Below, piece after piece: positions 1 to 9,616 of a stretch of 64,000 nt of DNA (positions within the stretch are counted from its first letter, which is position 1; each line of letters starts with the position of its first letter). The translations under genes were made by a program, and so were the position numbers. Location: positions 1 through 64,000 of IMG/VR virus record IMGVR_UViG_3300025141_000020. The stretch is one strand, 5' to 3'. Under the pieces are notes generated by a model that made no database searches, was not told the DNA's origin, and saw only the letters and a program-made list of their open reading frames with translations.

Positions 1-674
1 GTACCCTCAATTAATCCTAGTTTATATGCTTGATATCTAGCACTTTTATCATGTTTCATAAAAGCTTTTTGATACCTTGACGATGCTAAGGATGGAAGTT
101 TCGAATAATCGATACTATCCCAATCCTTTGCACACATCTTGGTTTCAACCACATTTGTAAGTTTTACCAATACCTTACGGTAAATTTTAGGTGAGACTTT
201 AAGGTATCTACGTATAATGTTAGCCTTGGCACCTTTTCTAGGCATCCATTTTGCACATAGACCATCTTTGTTCTCCAATGCTGTCTTAATTAAATCTAAA
301 GCAGAGTCCCAACAATTCTGGGTTCCTACTAAAGTTAAGACATCATCCCATCTACCATATTCACTAATTAAGTGAATGTTTTTATGTAAAACTTTTCTGT
401 GGTTGTCACATAACCATAATAGACAATCTCTGAAGATTTGTCTCTCACCAGCTCCACCACGGACATCACGTGCCCAAAAAATAATTCTAATTGTTGTGAG
501 AGGGTCTTCATTAAAAGCTTTAGAAACCTTGGCGAAAAGTTTCTCGTTGCTCGCACCACGCATTGCTCCTATTTGAAAAAATAAGTTGACACAATGTTTA
601 AGTGAGGATGAGTTTGTGGTCATCCCATTCTCAGTAGTTGTGTCTCTTTGTTGTATGGCGTCGATTAAATTCAT
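1..674 (-). CDS. DUF2828 / TROVE(ROT)-like protein, N-terminal part (runs off the window start; missing from the ORF track)
   Basis: Manual translation from ATG at 674: MNLIDAIQQRDTTTENGMTTNSSSLKHCVNLFFQIGAMRG...FWARDVRGGAGERQIFR...ISEYGRWDD...CAKWMPRKG...VVETKMC...IDYSKLPS, open to position 1. TENG, RDxRGGxGER, YGRWDD and AKWxPR are DUF2828 hallmarks. Confidence 0.85.
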   Translation of the reverse strand, partial: MNLIDAIQQRDTTTENGMTTNSSSLKHCVNLFFQIGAMRGASNEKLFAKVSKAFNEDPLTTIRIIFWARDVRGGAGERQIFRDCLLWLCDNHRKVLHKNIHLISEYGRWDDVLTLVGTQNCWDSALDLIKTALENKDGLCAKWMPRKGAKANIIRRYLKVSPKIYRKVLVKLTNVVETKMCAKDWDSIDYSKLPSLASSRYQKAFMKHDKSARYQAYKLGLIEG

Positions 675-720
675 AGTTATATAAGTATATTAGTTTTTGT
701 AAAAATTAAATTAGATAATA

Positions 721-749
721 ATGTTAATAATAAAAATACGTCCTGTCAA
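721..749 (-). promoter_or_regulatory. Class I promoter TTGACA-N17-TAACAT upstream of the DUF2828 gene
   Basis: Read directly on the minus strand; same geometry as the other class I sites. Confidence 0.55.
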
Positions 750-759
750 GCCCCTATGA

Positions 760-1032
760 CTAATTTTTTTGTTTTGATTCCCACCTTTCTCTTCTTGATG
801 GTTTAACGTCTTTCATTTTTTTAGTTTTAGATGGTGTGGCTGCGGTATTAAGTTTTCTACCAAATTTTACTAAATGCTCTAATTTTCTAATTTCTTTTTT
901 AGATTCACCGTTAATTGGCAGTCTATCTAGCTTTTGTTGTGGTGTTAAACTATTATAGTATTCCTGTCTTGACTCAGCAGCTCGTCTTCTCTCGTTTCTA
1001 CTTGTTGGTCCGTTTTTTCTTAATTTTGCCAT
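760..1032 (-). CDS. Small, very basic hypothetical protein (possible nucleic-acid binder)
   Basis: 90 aa, K/R-rich; lies between the tRNA-like gene and the DUF2828 gene. Confidence 0.7.
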   Translation of the reverse strand: MAKLRKNGPTSRNERRRAAESRQEYYNSLTPQQKLDRLPINGESKKEIRKLEHLVKFGRKLNTAATPSKTKKMKDVKPSRRERWESKQKN

Positions 1033-1051
1033 AGTTATTTTTAGTTTTTAG

Positions 1052-1123
1052 AGCGGGTGGGTGGAACGAACCACCATCTACCTACTGGAATGTATGCCGC
1101 TTTTATCTTTAAGCTACACCCGC
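1052..1123 (-). tRNA. Atypical tRNA-Gly(TCC)-like gene
   Basis: Minus strand: GCGGGTG TA GCTT AAAGATAA AAGC G GCATAC ATTCCA GTAGGT AGAT GGTGG TTCGTT CCACC CACCCGC T. Perfect 7-bp acceptor stem with Gly identity (G1-C72, C2-G71, G3-C70, U73), D stem and T stem present; anticodon and T loops only 6 nt; no encoded CCA. Confidence 0.75.
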
Positions 1124-1144
1124 ATGTGTTTTTACTTTAGTATA

Positions 1145-1173
1145 ATTATAAAATAAATTTTGTGTTTAGACAA
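1145..1173 (-). promoter_or_regulatory. Class I promoter TTGTCT-N17-TATAAT in front of the tRNA-like gene
   Basis: Read directly; -10 box lies 21 nt upstream of the tRNA 5' end. Confidence 0.7.
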
Positions 1174-1179
1174 GAAAAG

Positions 1180-1368
1180 TTAGTAATTTTTTTGATGTCT
1201 TCTGAATATCCTTTGTATATCCTCTGTTGTTATCCCTCCTCTATCTAGAGGGGCATCTAACAATACTTTAGATAAGGTTTTGAAAATATCAAATCTATCT
1301 TCTTTTAATGCGTCTTCTAGCATTTTAATTTGCTTTTTTCTATCTAAACTTAATAGAAAGTTTTCCAT
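1180..1368 (-). CDS. Hypothetical protein (62 aa)
   Basis: ORF tiles between neighbours on the coding strand. Confidence 0.6.
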   Translation of the reverse strand: MENFLLSLDRKKQIKMLEDALKEDRFDIFKTLSKVLLDAPLDRGGITTEDIQRIFRRHQKNY

Positions 1369-1400
1369 AGGTAATGGTTTTTAATTAATAATTTTTTGAT

Positions 1401-2894
1401 TTAGTTTTGTAAAGCTTTTTCGGCTTCCGCTGCAGTTGGGTAGTCACCTCTATCGTCTAGGTAACCAACTACAAATCTTTCATCTTTACATCCATTAGTT
1501 GCGTAGGATTTGAACTCACCTCCAACAATGAATGGTTTACCACACCACACATTTTCCATGATTGCCATTGGTATGGTTAGACTTTTATCTCCGGTTACAT
1601 TTAGAGCTGTAATATCTAAAGTGGATATACACTCAGGTATTGTTTTTAAATTAGGATTTTCAGGTATAGATATGAAATCTAAACTTTTACATTGACATAT
1701 CTCTGATGGTAGTTCTTTTAGTATTCCTGAAATATGTAATACCTTAAGTTGTTTAAACCTACCTATAGAAGGTGGTATTTTAAATCCTTTTAGTATATTA
1801 CTATCTGGTTTAACTTTACCGTATCCTGAACCTGTTGATATTGTTATGTCTAGGTGTGCTAAGTTATCGGGTAAGGTGTTAAAGAATTCATCAAACCCAT
1901 ATAAAGCGACAAATTTTCCTAGTGCATCACCTTGTGGGTACTTAAGAGATACATGGTCTGTCATTTTGTCATTCTCTGTCATGAATTTTTCTTTAAAAAA
2001 TTCTTTAAGTTCTTCCATAGGGCCAGATAACATTTCTACTATATCAACACCTCTATCATCTATATCCATAAAATTGCTAGTTTCAAAATGAAACTGATAT
2101 CTATTTTTTGGTAATCCAGTTTGGGTGTGTTTGTCTGCATCACTCCCTCTTGGTTTTGATACTTCGGTGTCCGTTTTATCTAATATAACATATAGTGGAC
2201 CTTTTGGTATGTATGTATTTTCATAATAGGTCAACCCTGGAGCTGAAGTACACCATTGTGTTTCTTTATTTTGACCACCGTAATAACAGGCTGCTTCTTT
2301 ACCTAAAGGATTTTTTTGTTCGATTTTTATAACTTGCCATTTATCACCATCAAAAACTAGTGTTGACCCAGGATGTATCTCCAACTCTTTTCTTTCTGCT
2401 TTAGACATTGTTAATTCATCCTTACTAATATTGTAGTCCTTTACCGCATCAAATAATGCATCCGTACCTTTAATTTTATTTATATCTTTTTCACCCTTAT
2501 ATTTTTTCATTGTTTTAAGGCGGTCTAACATTAATAAATTGTCAGTTACCTTATATAAATCTTCGAAAAATTGGTCTTGTAGTTGTTCTAATTTAACTCC
2601 CCAATCGGGACTACCGTAAGCGTAATGTTTATCAGCCTCTTGTTGTAACCCCATAAATTGTTTAATAATCCATTGGGTGTATTTTCCTACTTTCTTAATG
2701 TCTCCACTGTCAATATCTGCATCTCCTCCCGGCTTAGTTGTGGGGTCTGCTAACATCATGGCTTTTAATTGTTCTACTGACATTAAAGCTTTTTTACCTT
2801 TCTTTTTTGGCTTTGTATATTTTGTCATGAAAATATCATAACGAGAACCTTCAATAATCAGTTCGGATAATACGTCTCTAAAGTTAAATGCCAT
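1401..2894 (-). CDS. Phage protein with a central YG..T.WCT domain and C-terminal leucine-rich repeats
   Basis: LRR-like units IPPSIGRFKQLKVLHIS / LKELPSEICQCKSLDFISI / LKTIPECISTL; central AACYYGG..TQWCTS...GPLYVI...YQFHF motif; TATTTATA motif upstream. Confidence 0.7.
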   Translation of the reverse strand: MAFNFRDVLSELIIEGSRYDIFMTKYTKPKKKGKKALMSVEQLKAMMLADPTTKPGGDADIDSGDIKKVGKYTQWIIKQFMGLQQEADKHYAYGSPDWGVKLEQLQDQFFEDLYKVTDNLLMLDRLKTMKKYKGEKDINKIKGTDALFDAVKDYNISKDELTMSKAERKELEIHPGSTLVFDGDKWQVIKIEQKNPLGKEAACYYGGQNKETQWCTSAPGLTYYENTYIPKGPLYVILDKTDTEVSKPRGSDADKHTQTGLPKNRYQFHFETSNFMDIDDRGVDIVEMLSGPMEELKEFFKEKFMTENDKMTDHVSLKYPQGDALGKFVALYGFDEFFNTLPDNLAHLDITISTGSGYGKVKPDSNILKGFKIPPSIGRFKQLKVLHISGILKELPSEICQCKSLDFISIPENPNLKTIPECISTLDITALNVTGDKSLTIPMAIMENVWCGKPFIVGGEFKSYATNGCKDERFVVGYLDDRGDYPTAAEAEKALQN

Positions 2895-2912
2895 GTTAAA
2901 TTAGTGTTTTTA

Positions 2913-2920
2913 TATAAATA
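2913..2920 (-). promoter_or_regulatory. Class II (putative late) motif TATTTATA
   Basis: The same motif (TATTTAT[A/T/G]) lies on the coding strand upstream of genes at 5509, 7358(+), 11433, 12022, 14303, 15919(+), 17163(+), 17215, 21050, 21918, 26021, 27884, 41865 and 54408. Confidence 0.7.
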
Positions 2921-2938
2921 TGTGTTAAGTATAAAGAA

Positions 2939-3637
2939 TTATAGGGTTTTGATATAGGATATTATATCCATTAGAGCATTAACATCTTTTTCACAATATT
3001 CTTTTATTTCTGAAATGTTATTGTCTTCATAATAGCTTCTATGTATGTTAGTCCCATCTACTTTTCCGTCTTTTGGTGTGTCTAATCCCAACACACTACA
3101 TATTAAATGTAATGCTGATAATCCTTTGTAAGACCCAAAGTTCCATACCTCTTTGGTATCTAGTGCTTTTATTTCCCATGGTTTAGTATCGTGAGAAGGC
3201 ATAATAGGTGAAGGTTTTATCTTATTTACCAACATTCTTTTACCAAGGTAAGGTAAATCAAATGTTTTGATGTTATGTCCACATAATGAAAAATCTAACT
3301 TGTAAACTCTATTTAAAAGTTTAACTGTTTCTTTTAATATCTCTTCTTCACCACCTTTAGTAAATGATTGTATTTTTCTTTCTTTAGCTGTAATGAACCC
3401 TGCACTAACACAAACTATTCTACCAAACTCTGGTAATAGTCCAGCGTATTTCTTAAATAGTTCTCCTTCAGACATTCTTTCATCTTCTGGATAATGTCTT
3501 CTAAAGTAAGACTCACCCATTTTATTCCATAAATTATAAAGAATTGTATTCTTTTCTTCCATTTCTTCTATGGTTGCATAAGACCCACAGGTTTCTATAT
3601 CAAAAAATAGTAATTTATTCTCCTGAATATTTTTCAT
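2939..3637 (-). CDS. DEDDy 3'-5' exonuclease (PolB-exo2-like, stand-alone)
   Basis: Exo I FFDIET, Exo II GHNIKTFD, Exo III YCEKD. Confidence 0.85.
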   Translation of the reverse strand: MKNIQENKLLFFDIETCGSYATIEEMEEKNTILYNLWNKMGESYFRRHYPEDERMSEGELFKKYAGLLPEFGRIVCVSAGFITAKERKIQSFTKGGEEEILKETVKLLNRVYKLDFSLCGHNIKTFDLPYLGKRMLVNKIKPSPIMPSHDTKPWEIKALDTKEVWNFGSYKGLSALHLICSVLGLDTPKDGKVDGTNIHRSYYEDNNISEIKEYCEKDVNALMDIISYIKTL

Positions 3638-6166: not shown

Positions 6167-7202
6167 CTACCTCTAACTTAACTTTTAAAGTATTTAAAAT
6201 TCTTTTGGTTATCTTATATGGGTCTCCATTACTTGCTGGCCTTCTATCTTCTATATGCCCTTTCCAGTTATTTTGTACCGTGGAAACTGGAATTCTTATA
6301 CTAGCTCCTCTATCGGATACACCATAACTAAACTTTTCAATAGATTGTGTTTCGTGTAATCCAGTAAGTCTTTTTTCATTGTCACTCCCATAGTTGTTAA
6401 TATGTTCTTCATGATAGAAAGAAAAAGTATCACAAATACCTTCTATCATATCTTTTCCACCAAGTTCTCTCATTTTTTTGGTTGAGAAGTTCACATGCAT
6501 TCCTGAACCATTCCAGTCACCGTTTACTGGTTTTGGGTGTAATTCTACTGTAACTCCGTGGCTTTCTGTAATTCTATAAAGTAGGTATCTGCTAACCCAT
6601 AGGTCATCTGAAACTTTTAGTGCTCCTTTACCGAATAGTTGATATTCCCATTGTCCTAACATTACCTCAGCGTTGACACCGGTAATATCTAACCCAATAT
6701 TCATACATGCATCTAAATGTTGTTCTACAATTTCTCTACCAATAACTCTATCTGTCCCAACTCCACAATAGTATTTTCCTTGTGGTTCTGGATATCCTTC
6801 TTTGGGGAATCCTAGGGGTTTACCATCTTTCATTAATACATACTCTTGTTCGAATCCAAACCACCATTCCTCTTGGTGTCTGTGAAAATCGATATCCTCC
6901 AATTCTGCTCTTTCGTTAGTCTTGTGTGAAATACCTTTTTCATTTAATACTTCACATAATGCAAGATAAGACCCAACTCTTTGTGGGTCTGGGTAAACTC
7001 TCACTGGTCTTAGGATACAATCTGAATTATTGCCCACGGCTTGTTGTGTGGAACTACCGTCGAATGACCATTCTGGTAAATCTTCTAGGTTTGGTGTGGT
7101 AATCGTACCATTTAATTCTACAATTTTAGTTTTACTTCTTAAAGTTTGTTCTGGTTTAGTTCCGTCTAACCAGATATATTCAATCTTTGTTTTTATTGTC
7201 AT
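6159..7202 (-). CDS. glnII: Glutamine synthetase type II (auxiliary metabolic gene)
   Basis: EYIWLDG, WSFDGSST, GFEQEY, PQGKYYCGVG, NAEVMLGQWEYQ, WNGSGMH, RLTGLHET, RGASIRIP, EDRRPASNGDPY. Confidence 0.95.
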   Translation of the reverse strand: MTIKTKIEYIWLDGTKPEQTLRSKTKIVELNGTITTPNLEDLPEWSFDGSSTQQAVGNNSDCILRPVRVYPDPQRVGSYLALCEVLNEKGISHKTNERAELEDIDFHRHQEEWWFGFEQEYVLMKDGKPLGFPKEGYPEPQGKYYCGVGTDRVIGREIVEQHLDACMNIGLDITGVNAEVMLGQWEYQLFGKGALKVSDDLWVSRYLLYRITESHGVTVELHPKPVNGDWNGSGMHVNFSTKKMRELGGKDMIEGICDTFSFYHEEHINNYGSDNEKRLTGLHETQSIEKFSYGVSDRGASIRIPVSTVQNNWKGHIEDRRPASNGDPYKITKRILNTLKVKLEVVE

Positions 7203-7353
7203 TTTTATCTATTTTATTTAAAAGTTTATCTAGTTGTTGTTGTAATAGTCGCACCTCATTAGGCTCTACATCATCTTCTAGTTTTAGGGTTAATAGGGTT
7301 TCTTTTAATTCCTCTAATTCTTTTTTAATTTCTGGGTTGGTTTCTGTATTCAT
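7180..7353 (-). CDS. Small coiled-coil hypothetical protein (57 aa, not in ORF track)
   Basis: MNTETNPEIKKELEELKETLLTLKLEDD...; fills the gap upstream of glnII. Confidence 0.45.
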   Translation of the reverse strand: MNTETNPEIKKELEELKETLLTLKLEDDVEPNEVRLLQQQLDKLLNKIDKNDNKNKD

Positions 7354-7370
7354 TTTATATTTATAATCAT

Positions 7371-7682
7371 ATGAATGTTATTTTAAATAATAAAGAAATT
7401 CCGGTAGAAATTATGTCTACCCCTAATAGTATTTCTACTGGCATGATGGGTAGAGACCATTTAGATGGTGGTATGTTGTTTGTTTTTGAGGATGTAGGCG
7501 AACGTTCTTTCTGGATGAAAAATTGTTTGATACCTTTAGATATCATTTTTATGGTTAATGGTGAAGTTAGTGAGGTTTACGAAAATTGTGTTCCTTGTGA
7601 ATCAGAGCCTTGTGAAAGATATTGGGGTTTGGCTGATAAAGTTTTAGAATTAAATGGTGGGGAATATTTAAAATTTATATGA
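7371..7682 (+). CDS. DUF192 family protein
   Basis: GMMGR...GMLFVF...SFWMKNCLIPLDIIF...VLELNGG. Confidence 0.9.
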   Translation: MNVILNNKEIPVEIMSTPNSISTGMMGRDHLDGGMLFVFEDVGERSFWMKNCLIPLDIIFMVNGEVSEVYENCVPCESEPCERYWGLADKVLELNGGEYLKFI

Positions 7683-9616
7683 AAAGAAAAAAATTAATAT
7701 TATCTAAAAGTAGTCTTATAGATTTAATATGTGAGACGGTACTAGAAGTCTCTAATATTAATGAGGGAGGAGATACAGACACAGTTATGCCGACACGTAA
7801 ATCTCTTGGATTAGGTGGTAAAACAGCTTTAGATAGTAAGACATCTTCTTTTGTAAAAGCACAAAAAGATTCTAGTGAACACATTGGACATACAGATTAT
7901 GGATATAGTCCACACGCAGGGTGGAAACAGTTTTGGGCTGATTGGCAAAATGACGATTTCTATATCGGCGATAAGCATAGTCAGTATTGTCATAGCTGTG
8001 GACTCGGTTATCACGGATATGCCGAGGGAAATATAGATGAAGACGCGAAATTTAGTTATATACAATCTGGAACTGGTGATTTAGTTGCTGATGCAAATGA
8101 TATACAAAGCTATTTAAAAAACGAAGTGGGTGACAAATACAAGAACCTCGGAACAGATGGTACTTTTGGTGATGAAACAGCAAAAGCTGTAGGTGCTTAC
8201 TTAGGGTACCCGAATATTACATCAAAGGTGAAATTATTAGAATACCTTGCACCTAAATACCCAGATGAATTTGGGACAAAAGGTAAATCTGGTTATGGAA
8301 TTGGTGGTAAATCACAAGGAATAATAGCAGACCTATTGTCTGCAAAATGTGTAAAGGATTTGAGGGAGTGTATGGACAAATCTGATTTTGCAACAAAACA
8401 CGGTAAGACAAGAGAAGAATTTGCAGATATGTTTTGGAAGGCAGCTGTTAAAGCTAGAACAGAGGCTATAGATTGGATTATAGAGTTTTATAGTGACAAA
8501 AACCCAGATAATTTCAATAAACTTATTCCGGAAGATGAGCAGTTTAAAAATTTCTATTCTCTTTGGACTCTAAAAGACATAGTTGCCGCTATGCAAAATA
8601 ACCAGGATTTAGGTTTATCGAAATATGAGCTGCAGGGTTTAAATTACTTGAGGATGGACGTTTATAGTAAACTGCGTAATAAATTAGAAGAGATGAAGGG
8701 AGAGGAGAAGTATGAAACAGACTTAGACTACGGTGTATTTTCTAAATCACTTAGAATATTCTTTTGTTGTGAAGGGGATTTTTTTGCTTGGGTTAACGAT
8801 TCCCAATCTCTGTATCGATATAATGTAAATTTATATACTTTTCTTAACCCGAGTGAAGAGGGTTGGGAACATGACATGTTTAGTTCAACCTTACATGAAT
8901 TAGGACATATTGTAGATAATATTCTTTTGAAAGACCTGGGGGTAAAACCCTATCCGGGAGATATATATCAGGATGAAGATAAAACGACAGACTACTTGAA
9001 CCCTCCTCCTAAAGATAAGGATAAGAGAGGCCCTTATGTCACTAGAAAATCTGAGCTTTATGCGAGAATGTTTAATCTTAGACATTATTTTGATGTAAAG
9101 TCCACTATAAGTGGTGAAGCATGGGCTCAAGCATGGATGAAGAAGGTTAATAAGGGTGATATAATTTGGAATCCAGAAAAGACATTTGATGACCTTCCTG
9201 TACCTGAGTTTGGAATTTCTAAAGTTGGTGATAAGGTCTATTTGGAATTAACCTTTGAGCTTGTGTGTCGTCTATGGAGTGGTAAACGGTGGCAGAAGAT
9301 ATGTAGGGACCCTGAAAAATGGACGTATGGTGATATATGGGATTTTACTACATTTATAAAATATAAGATAGGTGATAAGGAGACATTTTCTACTGAACAT
9401 GGACTGGGAGCGTTACTAGCTACTTTTACTTTTGACCCTAACAAATTTGAAGTTGATAATAAAGACCCAGATGTTTTCTGGATTGTCTTTGATTTTAATA
9501 AGATTGCAGAAGCTAATAGATTATACGTAATGATGGACCCAAATGAGTTGGTGACTGATTCAGAGGAGTTTGCTGCCTTGGAAAATCTATATGACGGACT
9601 TCCAAAACCAAGTTAA
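7679..9616 (+). CDS. Peptidoglycan-binding-domain + HExxH zinc metalloprotease (645 aa)
   Basis: PGBD-like IQSYL...DGTFGDETAKAV; zincin LHELGH with downstream SELYAR; leader LILSKSSLIDLICETVLE. Confidence 0.65.
   Translation: MKRKKLILSKSSLIDLICETVLEVSNINEGGDTDTVMPTRKSLGLGGKTALDSKTSSFVKAQKDSSEHIGHTDYGYSPHAGWKQFWADWQNDDFYIGDKHSQYCHSCGLGYHGYAEGNIDEDAKFSYIQSGTGDLVADANDIQSYLKNEVGDKYKNLGTDGTFGDETAKAVGAYLGYPNITSKVKLLEYLAPKYPDEFGTKGKSGYGIGGKSQGIIADLLSAKCVKDLRECMDKSDFATKHGKTREEFADMFWKAAVKARTEAIDWIIEFYSDKNPDNFNKLIPEDEQFKNFYSLWTLKDIVAAMQNNQDLGLSKYELQGLNYLRMDVYSKLRNKLEEMKGEEKYETDLDYGVFSKSLRIFFCCEGDFFAWVNDSQSLYRYNVNLYTFLNPSEEGWEHDMFSSTLHELGHIVDNILLKDLGVKPYPGDIYQDEDKTTDYLNPPPKDKDKRGPYVTRKSELYARMFNLRHYFDVKSTISGEAWAQAWMKKVNKGDIIWNPEKTFDDLPVPEFGISKVGDKVYLELTFELVCRLWSGKRWQKICRDPEKWTYGDIWDFTTFIKYKIGDKETFSTEHGLGALLATFTFDPNKFEVDNKDPDVFWIVFDFNKIAEANRLYVMMDPNELVTDSEEFAALENLYDGLPKPS

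What the first reader, a model, noticed from the sequence alone, without database searches (positions are those of the whole stretch)
1..1173. TROVE/ROT-like protein + basic small protein + tRNA-like RNA: possible ribonucleoprotein RNA-repair or decoy module
Seen: in one minus-strand run, a promoter drives an aberrant tRNA-Gly, followed by a 90-aa highly basic ORF and a DUF2828 protein that the ORF track missed. Established: Ro60/TROVE proteins bind Y RNAs, bacterial YrlA RNAs are tRNA mimics, and such genes often neighbour RNA-repair ligases. Inference: this could be a phage RNP that protects, repairs or decoys tRNA against host anticodon nucleases.
Basis: partly seen in the sequence, partly recalled or inferred. 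Interest (0 to 1): 0.65.

Follow-up and report, generated by a model that had tools for sequence, protein, structure and literature searches.

The report
Phage Ro60-like gene beside odd tRNA
At the left end of this marine jumbo-phage contig, a gene for a Ro60-type RNA-binding ring protein sits next to a conserved but non-standard glycine tRNA gene and a small basic orphan gene; the protein belongs to a known phage family, the three genes are not a fixed module, and the unusual tRNA is the new part.

Summary
All three elements are real and lie on the minus strand. They are a tRNA-like gene (1123..1052), a 90-aa ORF with pI 10.9 (1032..763), and the first 224 codons of a DUF2828 gene (674..3) cut by the contig start.

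Full-length relatives (~477 aa, DUF2828+DUF7788) fold like Ro60. Every top PDB match is a Ro60 structure (Z 14-19, both domains). The family (phrog_850) occurs in 711 phage records. It lies within 4 kb of tRNA genes in 12 of 19 genomes sampled. In mycobacteriophage LeBron it lies next to a YrlA-like RNA, and in a Listeria phage next to RtcB.

The three-gene linkage holds in only one sublineage. In a 93%-complete relative the genes are 15-200 kb apart. The closest relative of the Ro-like gene lacks the other two upstream. No RNA ligase and no YrlA was found in this phage group.

The RNA is a compensatorily conserved cloverleaf. It keeps the bacterial GlyRS identity set but has an 8-nt (or 6-nt) anticodon loop and non-canonical D and T loops. 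It is the only tRNA-model hit in two ~200-300 kb genomes. It belongs to a tRNA-Gly lineage found only in phage contigs, with variable positions 33-34.

Verdict: observation confirmed, interpretation partly supported, functional coupling unproven.

The parts
3..674 (-). N-terminal 224 codons of a Ro60-like RNA-binding protein gene (DUF2828 domain). The C-terminal half, including the vWA/DUF7788 domain, lies beyond the contig start.
   Evidence: Pfam DUF2828 E 5.5e-31. Contig starts at window base 1. Full-length relatives of 477-479 aa carry DUF2828 plus DUF7788. phrog_850 'RNA-binding protein' E 1e-151. Ro60 fold, Z 14-19.
721..749 (-). Promoter-like site (TTGACA-17-TAACAT) in the 88-nt spacer in front of the Ro-like gene.
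   Evidence: Consensus scan, 10 of 12 matches. Not statistically distinguishable from chance.
760..1032 (-). 90-aa, strongly basic (pI 10.9) orphan protein gene, restricted to this marine jumbo-phage group.
   Evidence: ORF. No Pfam or PHROG match. 218 conserved homologues, all unnamed with no Pfam on record; those carrying a source label are from Tara, ENA or JGI metagenomes. 27 invariant columns.
1052..1123 (-). Non-canonical tRNA-Gly(UCC)-derived RNA. It has a 7-bp acceptor stem, U73, a 4-bp D stem and a D loop without GG. The anticodon arm reads as 6 bp plus a 6-nt loop, or as 5 bp plus an 8-nt loop CAUUCCAG. The variable loop is 4 nt and the T loop is 6 nt. No CCA is encoded.
   Evidence: Rfam tRNA 40 bits. 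ARAGORN relaxed. 17 distinct variants with compensatory changes at 5 pairs. Only RF00005 hit in the contig.
1145..1173 (-). Promoter-like site (TTGTCT-17-TATAAT) ending 21 nt upstream of the RNA's 5' end.
   Evidence: Consensus scan, 10 of 12. The same segment is conserved in L003 and L087, while other relatives have a tRNA-Arg or unrelated sequence there.

Best explanation
The region holds three separately conserved phage genes brought together in one sublineage, not an obligate three-part module.

(1) The DUF2828/DUF7788 protein is a compact Ro60 homologue: a HEAT-repeat ring closed by a vWA domain with an intact MIDAS site. By analogy with Ro60/Rsr and with the Thermus phage phiLo Ro60 (inferred, not shown here), it binds structured or tRNA-like RNA on or in the ring. 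It would use a bound RNA and/or its MIDAS face to engage a protein such as a host exoribonuclease, so reshaping RNA decay or blunting an RNA-directed host defence. Its genes recur beside phage tRNA arrays in unrelated phages and beside a YrlA-like RNA in LeBron. That points to tRNA-like transcripts as its clients.

(2) The RNA is a functional, phage-restricted derivative of tRNA-Gly(UCC). It keeps the features GlyRS reads but has an altered anticodon loop and elbow. It is the only tRNA-model hit in these ~200-300 kb genomes, although the contig also encodes a tmRNA. It is therefore a leading candidate client or partner of the Ro-like protein in this phage. It also occurs without that protein and far from its gene, so it must have a use of its own. 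The most likely use is as a glycine tRNA surrogate or decoy that a host tRNA-directed nuclease cannot use or destroy.

(3) The small basic protein is a lineage-specific gene of unknown role. It happens to be translated from a start 19 nt behind the RNA.
For: Ro60 fold. The AlphaFold model of a full-length relative (87% identical over the window's 224 aa; pLDDT 78.7) matches only Ro60 structures at the top. Foldseek gives E 2e-9 to 7e-5. VIA-align gives Z 14.1-18.8 over residues 26-478, against about 11 for vWA-only chains. The MIDAS residues D273, S275, S277, T345 and D377 are invariant.

Known family. phrog_850. 711 phage records, some annotated 'Ro-like RNA binding protein'.

tRNA company. 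A tRNA lies 166 nt away in REP5, 243 nt in CP81, 622 nt in LMTA-34 (plus RtcB 1.3 kb away), 2.0 kb in phiM7, 2.3 kb in SEP9 and 3.4 kb in KVP40. It lies 0.1-3.8 kb away in G006-G010. A YrlA-like RNA lies 125 nt downstream of LeBron gp53.

Not a fixed module. L002 (96% nt identity over the gene) lacks both other elements upstream. In G001 the RNA, the small gene and the Ro-like gene are at 251.7, 267.0 and 48.5 kb. The 37-kb complete phage G005 has the RNA but no Ro-like gene.

The RNA is functional. 96% of cells are paired, 5 pairs carry double changes, and slid controls pair only 35-49%. The anticodon loop and the first three acceptor pairs plus U73 are invariant, while the D and T loops vary in length. 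It is the sole RF00005 hit in G000 and G001.
Against: The RNA, small gene and Ro-like gene are adjacent in at least 11 contigs of the sublineage. The RNA and the Ro-like gene share a contig in 8 of 10 contigs of 37 kb or more that carry an RNA of this lineage. A dedicated pairing is therefore not excluded. The co-occurrence may equally reflect common descent.

No binding, charging or expression of the RNA was shown. Metatranscriptome contigs cover the Ro-like gene and once the small ORF, but not the RNA. That is uninformative for a small structured RNA.

The defence-evasion role is an analogy to published phage tRNAs. No nuclease that targets tRNA-Gly is known to me.
Confidence: 0.55

Rival explanations
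1. The three genes encode one ribonucleoprotein. The aberrant tRNA acts as a Y-RNA-like scaffold or decoy held by the Ro-like ring, with the basic protein as a third subunit. The complex protects, repairs or decoys tRNA against a host anticodon nuclease.
For: The three are adjacent and co-oriented in at least 11 contigs. These phages have no recognisable YrlA, and this RNA is their only tRNA-model hit. Related Ro-like genes sit beside a YrlA-like RNA or RtcB in other phages. The Bas63 homologue was reported as a counter-defence gene.
Against: The genes are dispersed in G001 and G002. Both other elements are absent upstream of the closest Ro-like relative, L002. In the sister clades G011 and G012 the RNA lies 16-20 kb from the Ro-like gene. 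G005 has the RNA alone. The RNA has normal tRNA topology without a 5'/3' Ro-binding stem. No RNA ligase was found.
Confidence: 0.13
2. The RNA is simply the phage's own glycine tRNA for translation and is unrelated to the Ro-like protein. It would be charged by host GlyRS. With C32 and anticodon UCC it might read all GGN codons. Its altered loop would let it escape a host tRNA-cleaving defence. Adjacency to the Ro-like gene would then be a by-product of both genes living in the phage's tRNA region.
For: G1-C72, C2-G71, G3-C70, U73, C35 and C36 are invariant in all 17 variants. That these are the GlyRS identity elements is my own knowledge. GGA plus GGG make up 46% of Gly codons in the contig. 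In L009, L090 and L104 the RNA directly follows a canonical tRNA-Arg(UCU), as in a tRNA array. Positions 33-34 differ between clades (AUU, AU, UA), as expected under pressure from a nuclease. Phage tRNAs with loop changes that evade nucleases are published.
Against: The loop is 8 nt (or 6 nt if C32 pairs with G38). The sister clades have A33. There is no G18G19, and the T loop varies between 6 and 8 nt. All of these would impair ribosomal decoding. No defence that targets tRNA-Gly is known to me.
Confidence: 0.3
3. The tRNA-like fold serves mainly as an RNA-processing signal. Cleavage by RNase P and RNase Z would release the downstream message with a short leader.
For: An ORF start lies 15-24 nt behind the RNA's 3' end in most of the genomic contexts listed, although the downstream ORF differs: 90-aa basic, 55 aa, 133 aa, 37-39-aa peptides or 95 aa.
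Against: This does not explain the invariant anticodon loop or the invariant GlyRS identity set. Tight gene spacing is normal in phages. The downstream ATG is 81-82 nt away in L007 and L082, and 134-139 nt away in L119 and L126.
Confidence: 0.1
4. The RNA is a decaying tRNA pseudogene and its neighbourhood is meaningless.
For: It fails ARAGORN's default settings and has defective loops.
Against: The stems are kept by compensatory changes. The loop is invariant across contigs whose neighbouring protein is only 53-57% identical. It is retained as the only tRNA-model hit in two large genomes, and it is also present in an unrelated 37-kb phage.
Confidence: 0.04

Closest known systems
Ro60/Rsr with YrlA-type Y RNAs (Salmonella, Deinococcus, mycobacteriophages; Thermus phage phiLo Ro60 with Yrl1/Yrl2 and host PNPase; PMC4201824, PMC12135203)
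   Same: A ring-plus-vWA protein with MIDAS, encoded next to a tRNA-like RNA in a phage. The fold match is full length, Z 17-19 to the phiLo Ro60.
   Different: The sequence family is DUF2828/DUF7788, not Pfam TROVE (no TROVE hit at E up to 10), and the protein is about 50 residues shorter. The neighbouring RNA has ordinary tRNA topology with an anticodon arm. It lacks a permuted tRNA-like domain on a 5'/3' Ro-binding stem and has no RF02553 match. The adjacency is not conserved.
Felixounavirus Bas63 gp130 (bioRxiv 10.1101/2024.10.10.617714)
   Same: A Ro60-like phage protein directly upstream of a tRNA array. It was reported to counter the Ppl defence, and its authors suggest some 'tRNAs' are Y RNAs. 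The same gene, in the same position, is a core Felixounavirus gene and a homologue of the window's protein (39% identity).
   Different: Orthology of Bas63 gp130 itself is inferred from REP5, not checked. Felixounaviruses carry over 20 canonical tRNAs, whereas this phage has one non-canonical tRNA.
Phage tRNAs with anticodon-loop changes that evade host anticodon nucleases (PMC10264068, PMC11555353)
   Same: A phage-encoded tRNA whose anticodon loop departs from the canonical pattern while its identity elements are kept. The loop's 5' half differs between related phages.
   Different: Those tRNAs keep a 7-nt loop and a normal elbow. Here the loop is expanded (or has A33) and the D and T loops are non-canonical. 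No cognate nuclease is known.
Non-proteinogenic tRNA-Gly of Staphylococcus, and +1 frameshift-suppressor tRNAs with 8-nt anticodon loops such as sufD (both from my own knowledge)
   Same: A glycine tRNA lacking G18G19 and the canonical T loop (the Staphylococcus case). An extra nucleotide in a glycine anticodon loop (the suppressor case).
   Different: Neither a Fem-type transferase nor a frameshift site was looked for. The sister clades have 7-nt loops, which argues against quadruplet reading as the lineage's shared function.

Membership tests
Ro60 / TROVE-vWA proteins | HEAT-repeat ring (TROVE module) followed by a C-terminal vWA domain that closes the ring | tested here: met
   The model of a full-length relative aligns over residues 26-478 to ten Ro60 entries at Z 14.1-18.8, rmsd 4.0-5.7 A, 381-397 residues. 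vWA-only chains score about 11. The window itself holds only the first 224 residues.
Ro60 / TROVE-vWA proteins | Sequence match to Pfam TROVE (PF05731) | tested here: not met
   No TROVE hit in any of 29 members at E up to 10. Only faint vWA_Ro60 hits (5 members, best E 0.017). The PDB profile search reaches the phiLo TROVE protein only at E 1.3e-3, over the MIDAS stretch.
Ro60 / TROVE-vWA proteins | MIDAS motif (DxSxS...T...D) in the vWA domain | tested here: met
   D273, S275, S277, T345 and D377 are invariant in 29 sequences. That these form MIDAS is my reading of the motif.
Ro60 / TROVE-vWA proteins | RNA binding, in particular of a Y RNA encoded nearby | tested here: inconclusive
   A YrlA-like RNA lies 125 nt downstream of the LeBron homologue (39.8 bits, below gathering 69). 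None was found in G000, G001, G011, G012 or G017, nor within 6 kb in five relatives. Binding itself is not testable here.
DUF2828/DUF7788 phage family (phrog_850) | Matches to both Pfam models and to the PHROG over full length | tested here: met
   Window fragment: DUF2828 E 5.5e-31. Relatives: DUF7788 E about 1e-50 and DUF2828 E about 1e-38. phrog_850 E 1e-151 over 8-475.
YrlA / Y RNA | Match to the Rfam YrlA model (RF02553) | tested here: not met
   No hit at E up to 10 in window 1-3000 or at E up to 0.01 in the whole contig. The model does ring in LeBron and phiM7.
YrlA / Y RNA | 5' and 3' ends paired into a long stem that carries the Ro-binding site | tested here: not met
   With 17 and 13 nt of flank, the minimum-energy and centroid folds are the plain cloverleaf with unpaired flanks.
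YrlA / Y RNA | Encoded next to the Ro gene | tested here: inconclusive
   Adjacent in one sublineage. 16 kb to over 90 kb away in G001, G011 and G012.
Canonical elongator tRNA (tRNA-Gly) | Cloverleaf with a 7-bp acceptor stem, D, anticodon and T stems | tested here: met
   22 pairs, 96% of cells paired, compensatory changes at 5 pairs. Rfam tRNA 40 bits.
Canonical elongator tRNA (tRNA-Gly) | 7-nt anticodon loop with U33 | tested here: not met
   The loop is CAUUCCAG (8 nt), or AUUCCA (6 nt) if C32 pairs with G38, and it is invariant in 17 variants. Sister clades have CAUCCAG (A33) or CUACCAG.
Canonical elongator tRNA (tRNA-Gly) | G18G19 in the D loop and a 7-nt T-loop (TPsiC-R-A) | tested here: not met
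   The D loop has no GG and varies from 5 to 9 nt. The T loop is 6 or 8 nt and varies in sequence.
Canonical elongator tRNA (tRNA-Gly) | Bacterial GlyRS identity set (G1-C72, C2-G71, G3-C70, U73, C35, C36) | tested here: met
   All six are invariant in 17 variants, including the divergent G005 copy. The list of identity elements is from my own knowledge. Charging is not testable here.
Phage/bacterial RNA-repair cassette (RtcB, Rnl, Pnkp) | An RNA ligase gene in the locus or genome | tested here: not met
   No RtcB, PF09414 or PF09511 match in G000 (66% complete) or G001 (93%). The PF09511 control rang nowhere, so that result is weak. Sequence to the left of the window does not exist in this contig.

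The most novel reading that the evidence does not exclude
The non-canonical tRNA-Gly lineage is found only in phage contigs. Its members have an 8-nt loop or A33, a conserved C32/G38, a kept GlyRS identity set and a degenerate elbow. The novel reading is that this lineage is a new, normal-topology kind of Y RNA. It would be a chargeable tRNA surrogate that the Ro-like ring holds and presents as a decoy or shield against a host tRNA-Gly-directed defence. That would replace the missing YrlA in these marine jumbo phages.
Probability: 0.12. Interest if true: 0.75.

Novelty: new variant of a known kind. Interest (0 to 1): 0.45.

Why it matters
Ro60-like proteins are among the most widespread phage proteins that still lack a demonstrated function: 711 cultured-phage records here. 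The survey made for this finding shows that their genes recur beside tRNA genes across unrelated phage families. It also shows a sub-threshold YrlA-like match beside the DUF2828-type gene of LeBron, and RtcB plus a ROOL RNA near the gene in a Listeria phage. This gives a concrete, testable client class, tRNA-like RNAs, for the whole family. It fits the one genetic result available, Bas63 gp130 as a counter-defence gene.

The second point is the tRNA itself. A lone, conserved glycine tRNA with a rule-breaking anticodon loop, found only in phage contigs, is a clean system for asking what phage tRNAs do beyond codon supply. Candidate roles are decoy, nuclease-proof replacement, unusual decoder or Ro partner. 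None of this changes textbook views unless the coupling is shown.

Tried and rejected
- Continuation of the gene. I looked for the rest of the gene at the other contig end and found no continuation and no terminal overlap.
- Further copies of the RNA. A covariance model of the RNA (R1), searched over 67 other loci, gave only canonical tRNAs at 30 bits or less and no further copies.
- YrlA. The Rfam search found none in the window, in five relatives' loci or in five whole phage records.
- RNA repair and CCA addition. No RtcB, Rnl2-type, Rnl1-type or class II CCA-adding enzyme was found in G000 or G001.
- Complex prediction. A fold of the Ro-like protein with the 90-aa protein gave 'no answer' (score 0.00). 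It is not evidence either way.
- Metatranscriptome contigs. In four runs they cover the Ro-like gene (1-700) and once the small ORF, but not the RNA. These are contigs, relatives' reads also map, and small RNAs are usually lost, so this shows neither expression levels nor absence.
- Cellular genomes. A pattern scan of 185,579 species' genomes for the A33 glycine tRNA gave one match, which on inspection is not a tRNA.
- Bas63 by accession. My guess hit Bas51 instead, and Bas63 was not among the 60 rows listed. Its orthology therefore stays inferred.
- Conserved neighbour. Clustering of neighbouring proteins found no neighbour conserved across all 80 loci.
- Sequence searches with the small protein. 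Pfam and PHROGs gave nothing.
- Housekeeping. No other genetic code was used.
Full report
WHAT IS THERE

The window is the first 64 kb of a 210,568-bp IMG/VR virus contig with 33.6% G+C, estimated 66% complete. Sequencing runs that hold it are marine metagenomes. All elements of the finding are on the minus strand.

- The tRNA-like RNA. A 72-nt RNA at 1123..1052 matches the Rfam tRNA model at 40 bits, against a gathering score of 29. ARAGORN rejects it at default settings. At relaxed settings it draws a cloverleaf with a two-base anticodon 'tc'.
- The small ORF. A 90-aa ORF (1032..763, pI 10.9) starts 19 nt behind the RNA.
- The DUF2828 ORF. After an 88-nt spacer, an ORF runs off the contig start (674..3). 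It is 224 aa with Pfam DUF2828 at E 5.5e-31.
- Promoter-like sites. One precedes the RNA (1173..1145) and one precedes the DUF2828 gene (749..721). Such matches are no commoner here than in shuffled sequence. The first is conserved in two relatives.

The DUF2828 gene is cut by the assembly, not broken. The other contig end does not continue it.

THE PROTEIN

IMG/VR holds 146 relatives, of which 80 were fetched. Complete genes encode 460-501 aa. The nearest encode 477-479 aa and are 82-87% identical over the window's part. They carry DUF2828 plus DUF7788, a vWA domain.

I aligned 29 non-redundant sequences (A2) and folded the first. The model has pLDDT 78.7 and pTM 0.73.

- Foldseek's eleven best PDB matches are all Ro60: Thermus phage phiLo, Xenopus, human and Deinococcus Rsr, at E 2e-9 to 7e-5.
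- VIA-align gives Z 14.1-18.8 over residues 26-478 with 381-397 aligned residues. Chains that match only the vWA domain reach about 11.
- The vWA MIDAS residues are invariant.
- By sequence the family is distinct from Pfam TROVE. There is no TROVE hit at E up to 10, and only faint vWA_Ro60 hits.

It equals phrog_850, 'RNA-binding protein', at E 1e-151. It occurs in 711 cultured-phage records. These include Felixounavirus (a core gene, 252 records), KVP40, Campylobacter, Listeria, Staphylococcus and Enterococcus phages. They also include cluster-L-type mycobacteriophages, where it is already annotated 'Ro-like RNA binding protein'. So 'Ro-like' is right, and it is already known.

WHAT KEEPS COMPANY WITH THIS PROTEIN FAMILY

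I looked at annotated neighbourhoods in seven cultured lineages.

| Phage | Nearest tRNA or related feature |
|---|---|
| REP5 (Felixounavirus) | tRNA array starts 166 nt downstream |
| CP81 | five tRNAs end 243 nt upstream |
| Listeria LMTA-34 | tRNA-Met 622 nt upstream, a tRNA array about 3 kb upstream, RtcB 1.3 kb downstream |
| Listeria LMTA-34 | a ROOL RNA match about 1 kb upstream |
| phiM7 | tRNAs 2.0 and 2.2 kb away |
| phiM7 | a partial YrlA match |
| SEP9 | a tRNA 2.3 kb away |
| KVP40 | a tRNA array 3.4 kb upstream |
| LeBron | no tRNA within 5 kb |
| LeBron | a full-length YrlA-model match (39.8 bits, E 2e-7 locally) 125 nt downstream, with well-matched T and D arms |

In IMG/VR genomes the gene lies 0.1-3.8 kb from tRNAs in G006-G010, and 13-66 kb away in G013-G015. 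Altogether 12 of 19 sampled genomes have a tRNA(-like) gene within 4 kb. By my rough estimate, only about 10-20% of such genomes lies that close to a tRNA. The samples are not all independent.

A preprint reports that the Felixounavirus Bas63 protein gp130 counters the Ppl defence. That protein is Ro60-like and lies directly upstream of the tRNA array. The authors guess that some 'tRNAs' are Y RNAs. Earlier work found YrlA RNAs next to Ro60 in many bacteria and phages. It also showed the phiLo Ro60 binding two upstream Y-like RNAs and host PNPase.

THE LINKAGE TEST FOR THIS LOCUS

Adjacent arrangements:
- The RNA, the small gene and the Ro-like gene are adjacent in the window and in at least ten further contigs. 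Examples are L003, L007-L009, L082, L087, L090, L100, L104 and L106.
- L110 has the RNA and the Ro-like gene without the small gene.

Dispersed or missing arrangements:
- L002 is 96% identical in DNA across the Ro-like gene, but the similarity stops at the start codon. Neither other element lies upstream. The same holds for L004-L006.
- In G001, a 297,623-bp relative that is 93% complete, the RNA is at 251.7 kb (-), the small gene at 267.0 kb (+) and the Ro-like gene at 48.5 kb (-).
- G002 shows the same RNA-to-small-gene separation.
- In those genomes the RNA sits between a DnaK-KTSC pair and a 253-aa protein with a weak nucleotidyltransferase match.
- The window's own genome has that block at 160-165 kb, without the RNA.
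- G005, a complete 37-kb phage with terminal repeats, has a diverged copy of the RNA and no Ro-like gene.

The trio is therefore a lineage-specific juxtaposition. No RtcB, Rnl2-type or Rnl1-type ligase and no class II CCA enzyme was found in G000 or G001. Nothing exists left of the window to inspect.

THE RNA

Seventeen distinct variants align with 88% mean identity. For the cloverleaf, 96% of cells pair. Five pairs show changes on both sides: acceptor pair 4-69, two in the anticodon stem and two in the T stem. Controls with slid partners pair only 35-49%. The support is modest because the sequences are close, but it is consistent.

Invariant features:
- the first three acceptor pairs (G-C, C-G, G-C);
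- the discriminator U;
- the D stem;
- the whole anticodon loop.

By my own knowledge the first two, together with C35 and C36, are the bacterial GlyRS identity set.

Non-canonical features:
- The anticodon arm is 6 bp plus a 6-nt loop. In standard numbering it is 5 bp plus an 8-nt loop, CAUUCCAG, with an extra A before U33 and a possible C32-G38 pair.
- The D loop lacks GG and varies from 5 to 9 nt.
- The T loop is 6 or 8 nt and varies in sequence.
- No CCA is encoded.

With its flanks it folds as the plain cloverleaf, with no stem between the 5' and 3' flanks. It gives no YrlA match. It is the only RF00005 hit in G000 and in G001. The contig does also encode a tmRNA, at 171,559-171,967, 123 bits.

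Wider searches show it is one branch of a glycine-tRNA lineage found only in phage contigs.
- Sister clades of the same jumbo-phage group carry a homologous gene with loop CAUCCAG, that is A33 with anticodon UCC. These are G011, L118, L122, L124-L128 and tandem pairs in L119 and L126.
- G012 has loop CUACCAG.
- These copies again have imperfect T arms. They lie 16-20 kb from the Ro-like gene.
- The pattern found no true match in 185,579 species' genomes.

Across clades, C32, C35, C36, A37 and G38 stay fixed. Only positions 33-34 change (AUU, AU, UA). That pattern suits an RNA that must still be read by GlyRS but is under pressure at the site where anticodon nucleases usually cut. This last point is an analogy to published phage tRNAs, not a result.

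GGA plus GGG are 46% of Gly codons in the contig. In most of the contexts listed, an ORF start lies 15-24 nt behind the RNA, whatever that ORF is.

THE SMALL PROTEIN

It has no Pfam or PHROG family. It has 218 homologues, all about 90 aa, unnamed and with no Pfam on record. Those carrying a source label are from Tara, ENA or JGI metagenomes, on contigs of up to 302 kb. It is strongly conserved. A fold together with the Ro-like protein gave no verdict. Its role is unknown. I see no evidence that it belongs to an RNP.

EXPRESSION

Contigs from four marine metatranscriptome runs lie on 1-700, the Ro-like gene. One lies on 740-939, the small ORF. None lies on the RNA or further upstream. Contigs cannot show strand, ends or level. 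Relatives' conserved genes also map. This is only weak support that the Ro-like gene is transcribed, and it says nothing about the RNA.

CONCLUSION

Shown here:
- a Ro60-fold protein gene of a known, widespread phage family;
- a conserved, structured, non-canonical tRNA-Gly-derived RNA gene;
- a conserved orphan basic protein gene;
- adjacency of the three in one sublineage only;
- a recurrent family-level neighbourhood of Ro-like genes with tRNA genes, and in LeBron with a YrlA-like RNA.

Inferred:
- the Ro-like protein binds tRNA-like RNA and modulates host RNA decay or defence;
- the odd tRNA is charged with glycine and serves as a surrogate or decoy;
- it is a leading candidate client in this phage.

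I put 0.55 on 'three independent genes with a possible, unproven client relation'. I put 0.13 on a dedicated three-part RNP and about 0.3 on the RNA being an unrelated defence-evading translation tRNA.

The kind of system (phage Ro60 plus tRNA-like RNA) is known. The RNA variant is new to my knowledge and to the papers I could search.

Noticed in passing
G000:C1:171559-171967 (outside the window; L134:760-1168): The phage contig encodes a tmRNA (Rfam 123 bits; ARAGORN tag peptide AKLATLGLVREGSTVAIA). It is a second RNA with a tRNA-like domain in a genome that has no canonical tRNA. L050 also carries a tmRNA.
   Followed up: partly
L113:6502-6610 (Mycobacterium phage LeBron, 125 nt downstream of gp53): A full-length match to the Rfam YrlA model (39.8 bits, below the gathering score of 69) in the 360-nt gap behind the DUF2828-type 'Ro-like' gene. 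This suggests the DUF2828 branch of Ro proteins also pairs with YrlA-type RNAs.
   Followed up: partly
L131:2461-3012 and 6841-8052 (Listeria phage LMTA-34): A ROOL RNA match (88.5 bits, just under the gathering score of 99.1) about 1 kb upstream of the Ro-like gene, and RtcB 1.3 kb downstream, with a tRNA array nearby.
   Followed up: no
L119:7321-7503, L126:5812-5990, L120, L122, L124-L128, L121: A glycine-tRNA lineage found only in phage contigs, with A33 (loop CAUCCAG) or loop CUACCAG, sometimes as tandem pairs. The narrow pattern used found no true match in 185,579 species' genomes.
   Followed up: partly
G000:C1:160142-164749; L095:1237-6404: A DnaK - KTSC-domain - 253-aa (weak NTP_transf_2 match, phrog_36119) gene block. 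In relatives G001-G004 the odd tRNA sits between the KTSC gene and the 253-aa gene. In the window's genome it does not.
   Followed up: partly
L091:683-753 (G005, 37,095-bp contig with terminal repeats): An apparently unrelated small phage (it lacks both the Ro-like and the small gene) carries a diverged copy of the same RNA. The anticodon loop is identical, the acceptor stem is changed compensatorily and the T arm is rebuilt. It has no Ro-like gene.
   Followed up: partly
window 1033-1051 and the equivalent places in L003, L008, L009, L090, L091, L095, L107, L118: The next ORF's ATG lies 15-24 nt behind the RNA's 3' end in most of the contexts listed, although the ORF differs. This may be tRNA-type processing that creates a short-leader mRNA.
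   Followed up: no
G017 (380,343 bp, complete): 75497-76945 and 308518-309930: One jumbo phage carries two paralogues of the Ro-like gene and two tandem A33 glycine tRNAs.
   Followed up: no
window 1404-2894 (-) and 2942-3637 (-): A 497-aa protein with weak leucine-rich-repeat matches, and a 232-aa PolB-exonuclease-like 3'-5' exonuclease (PF10108, E 5e-11), just upstream of the finding.
   Followed up: no
L004:1879-5237 and the L010-L024 loci: In the clade whose Ro-like protein is about 72% identical, the gene is preceded by glutamine-synthetase-like, glutaredoxin and thioredoxin genes.
   Followed up: no
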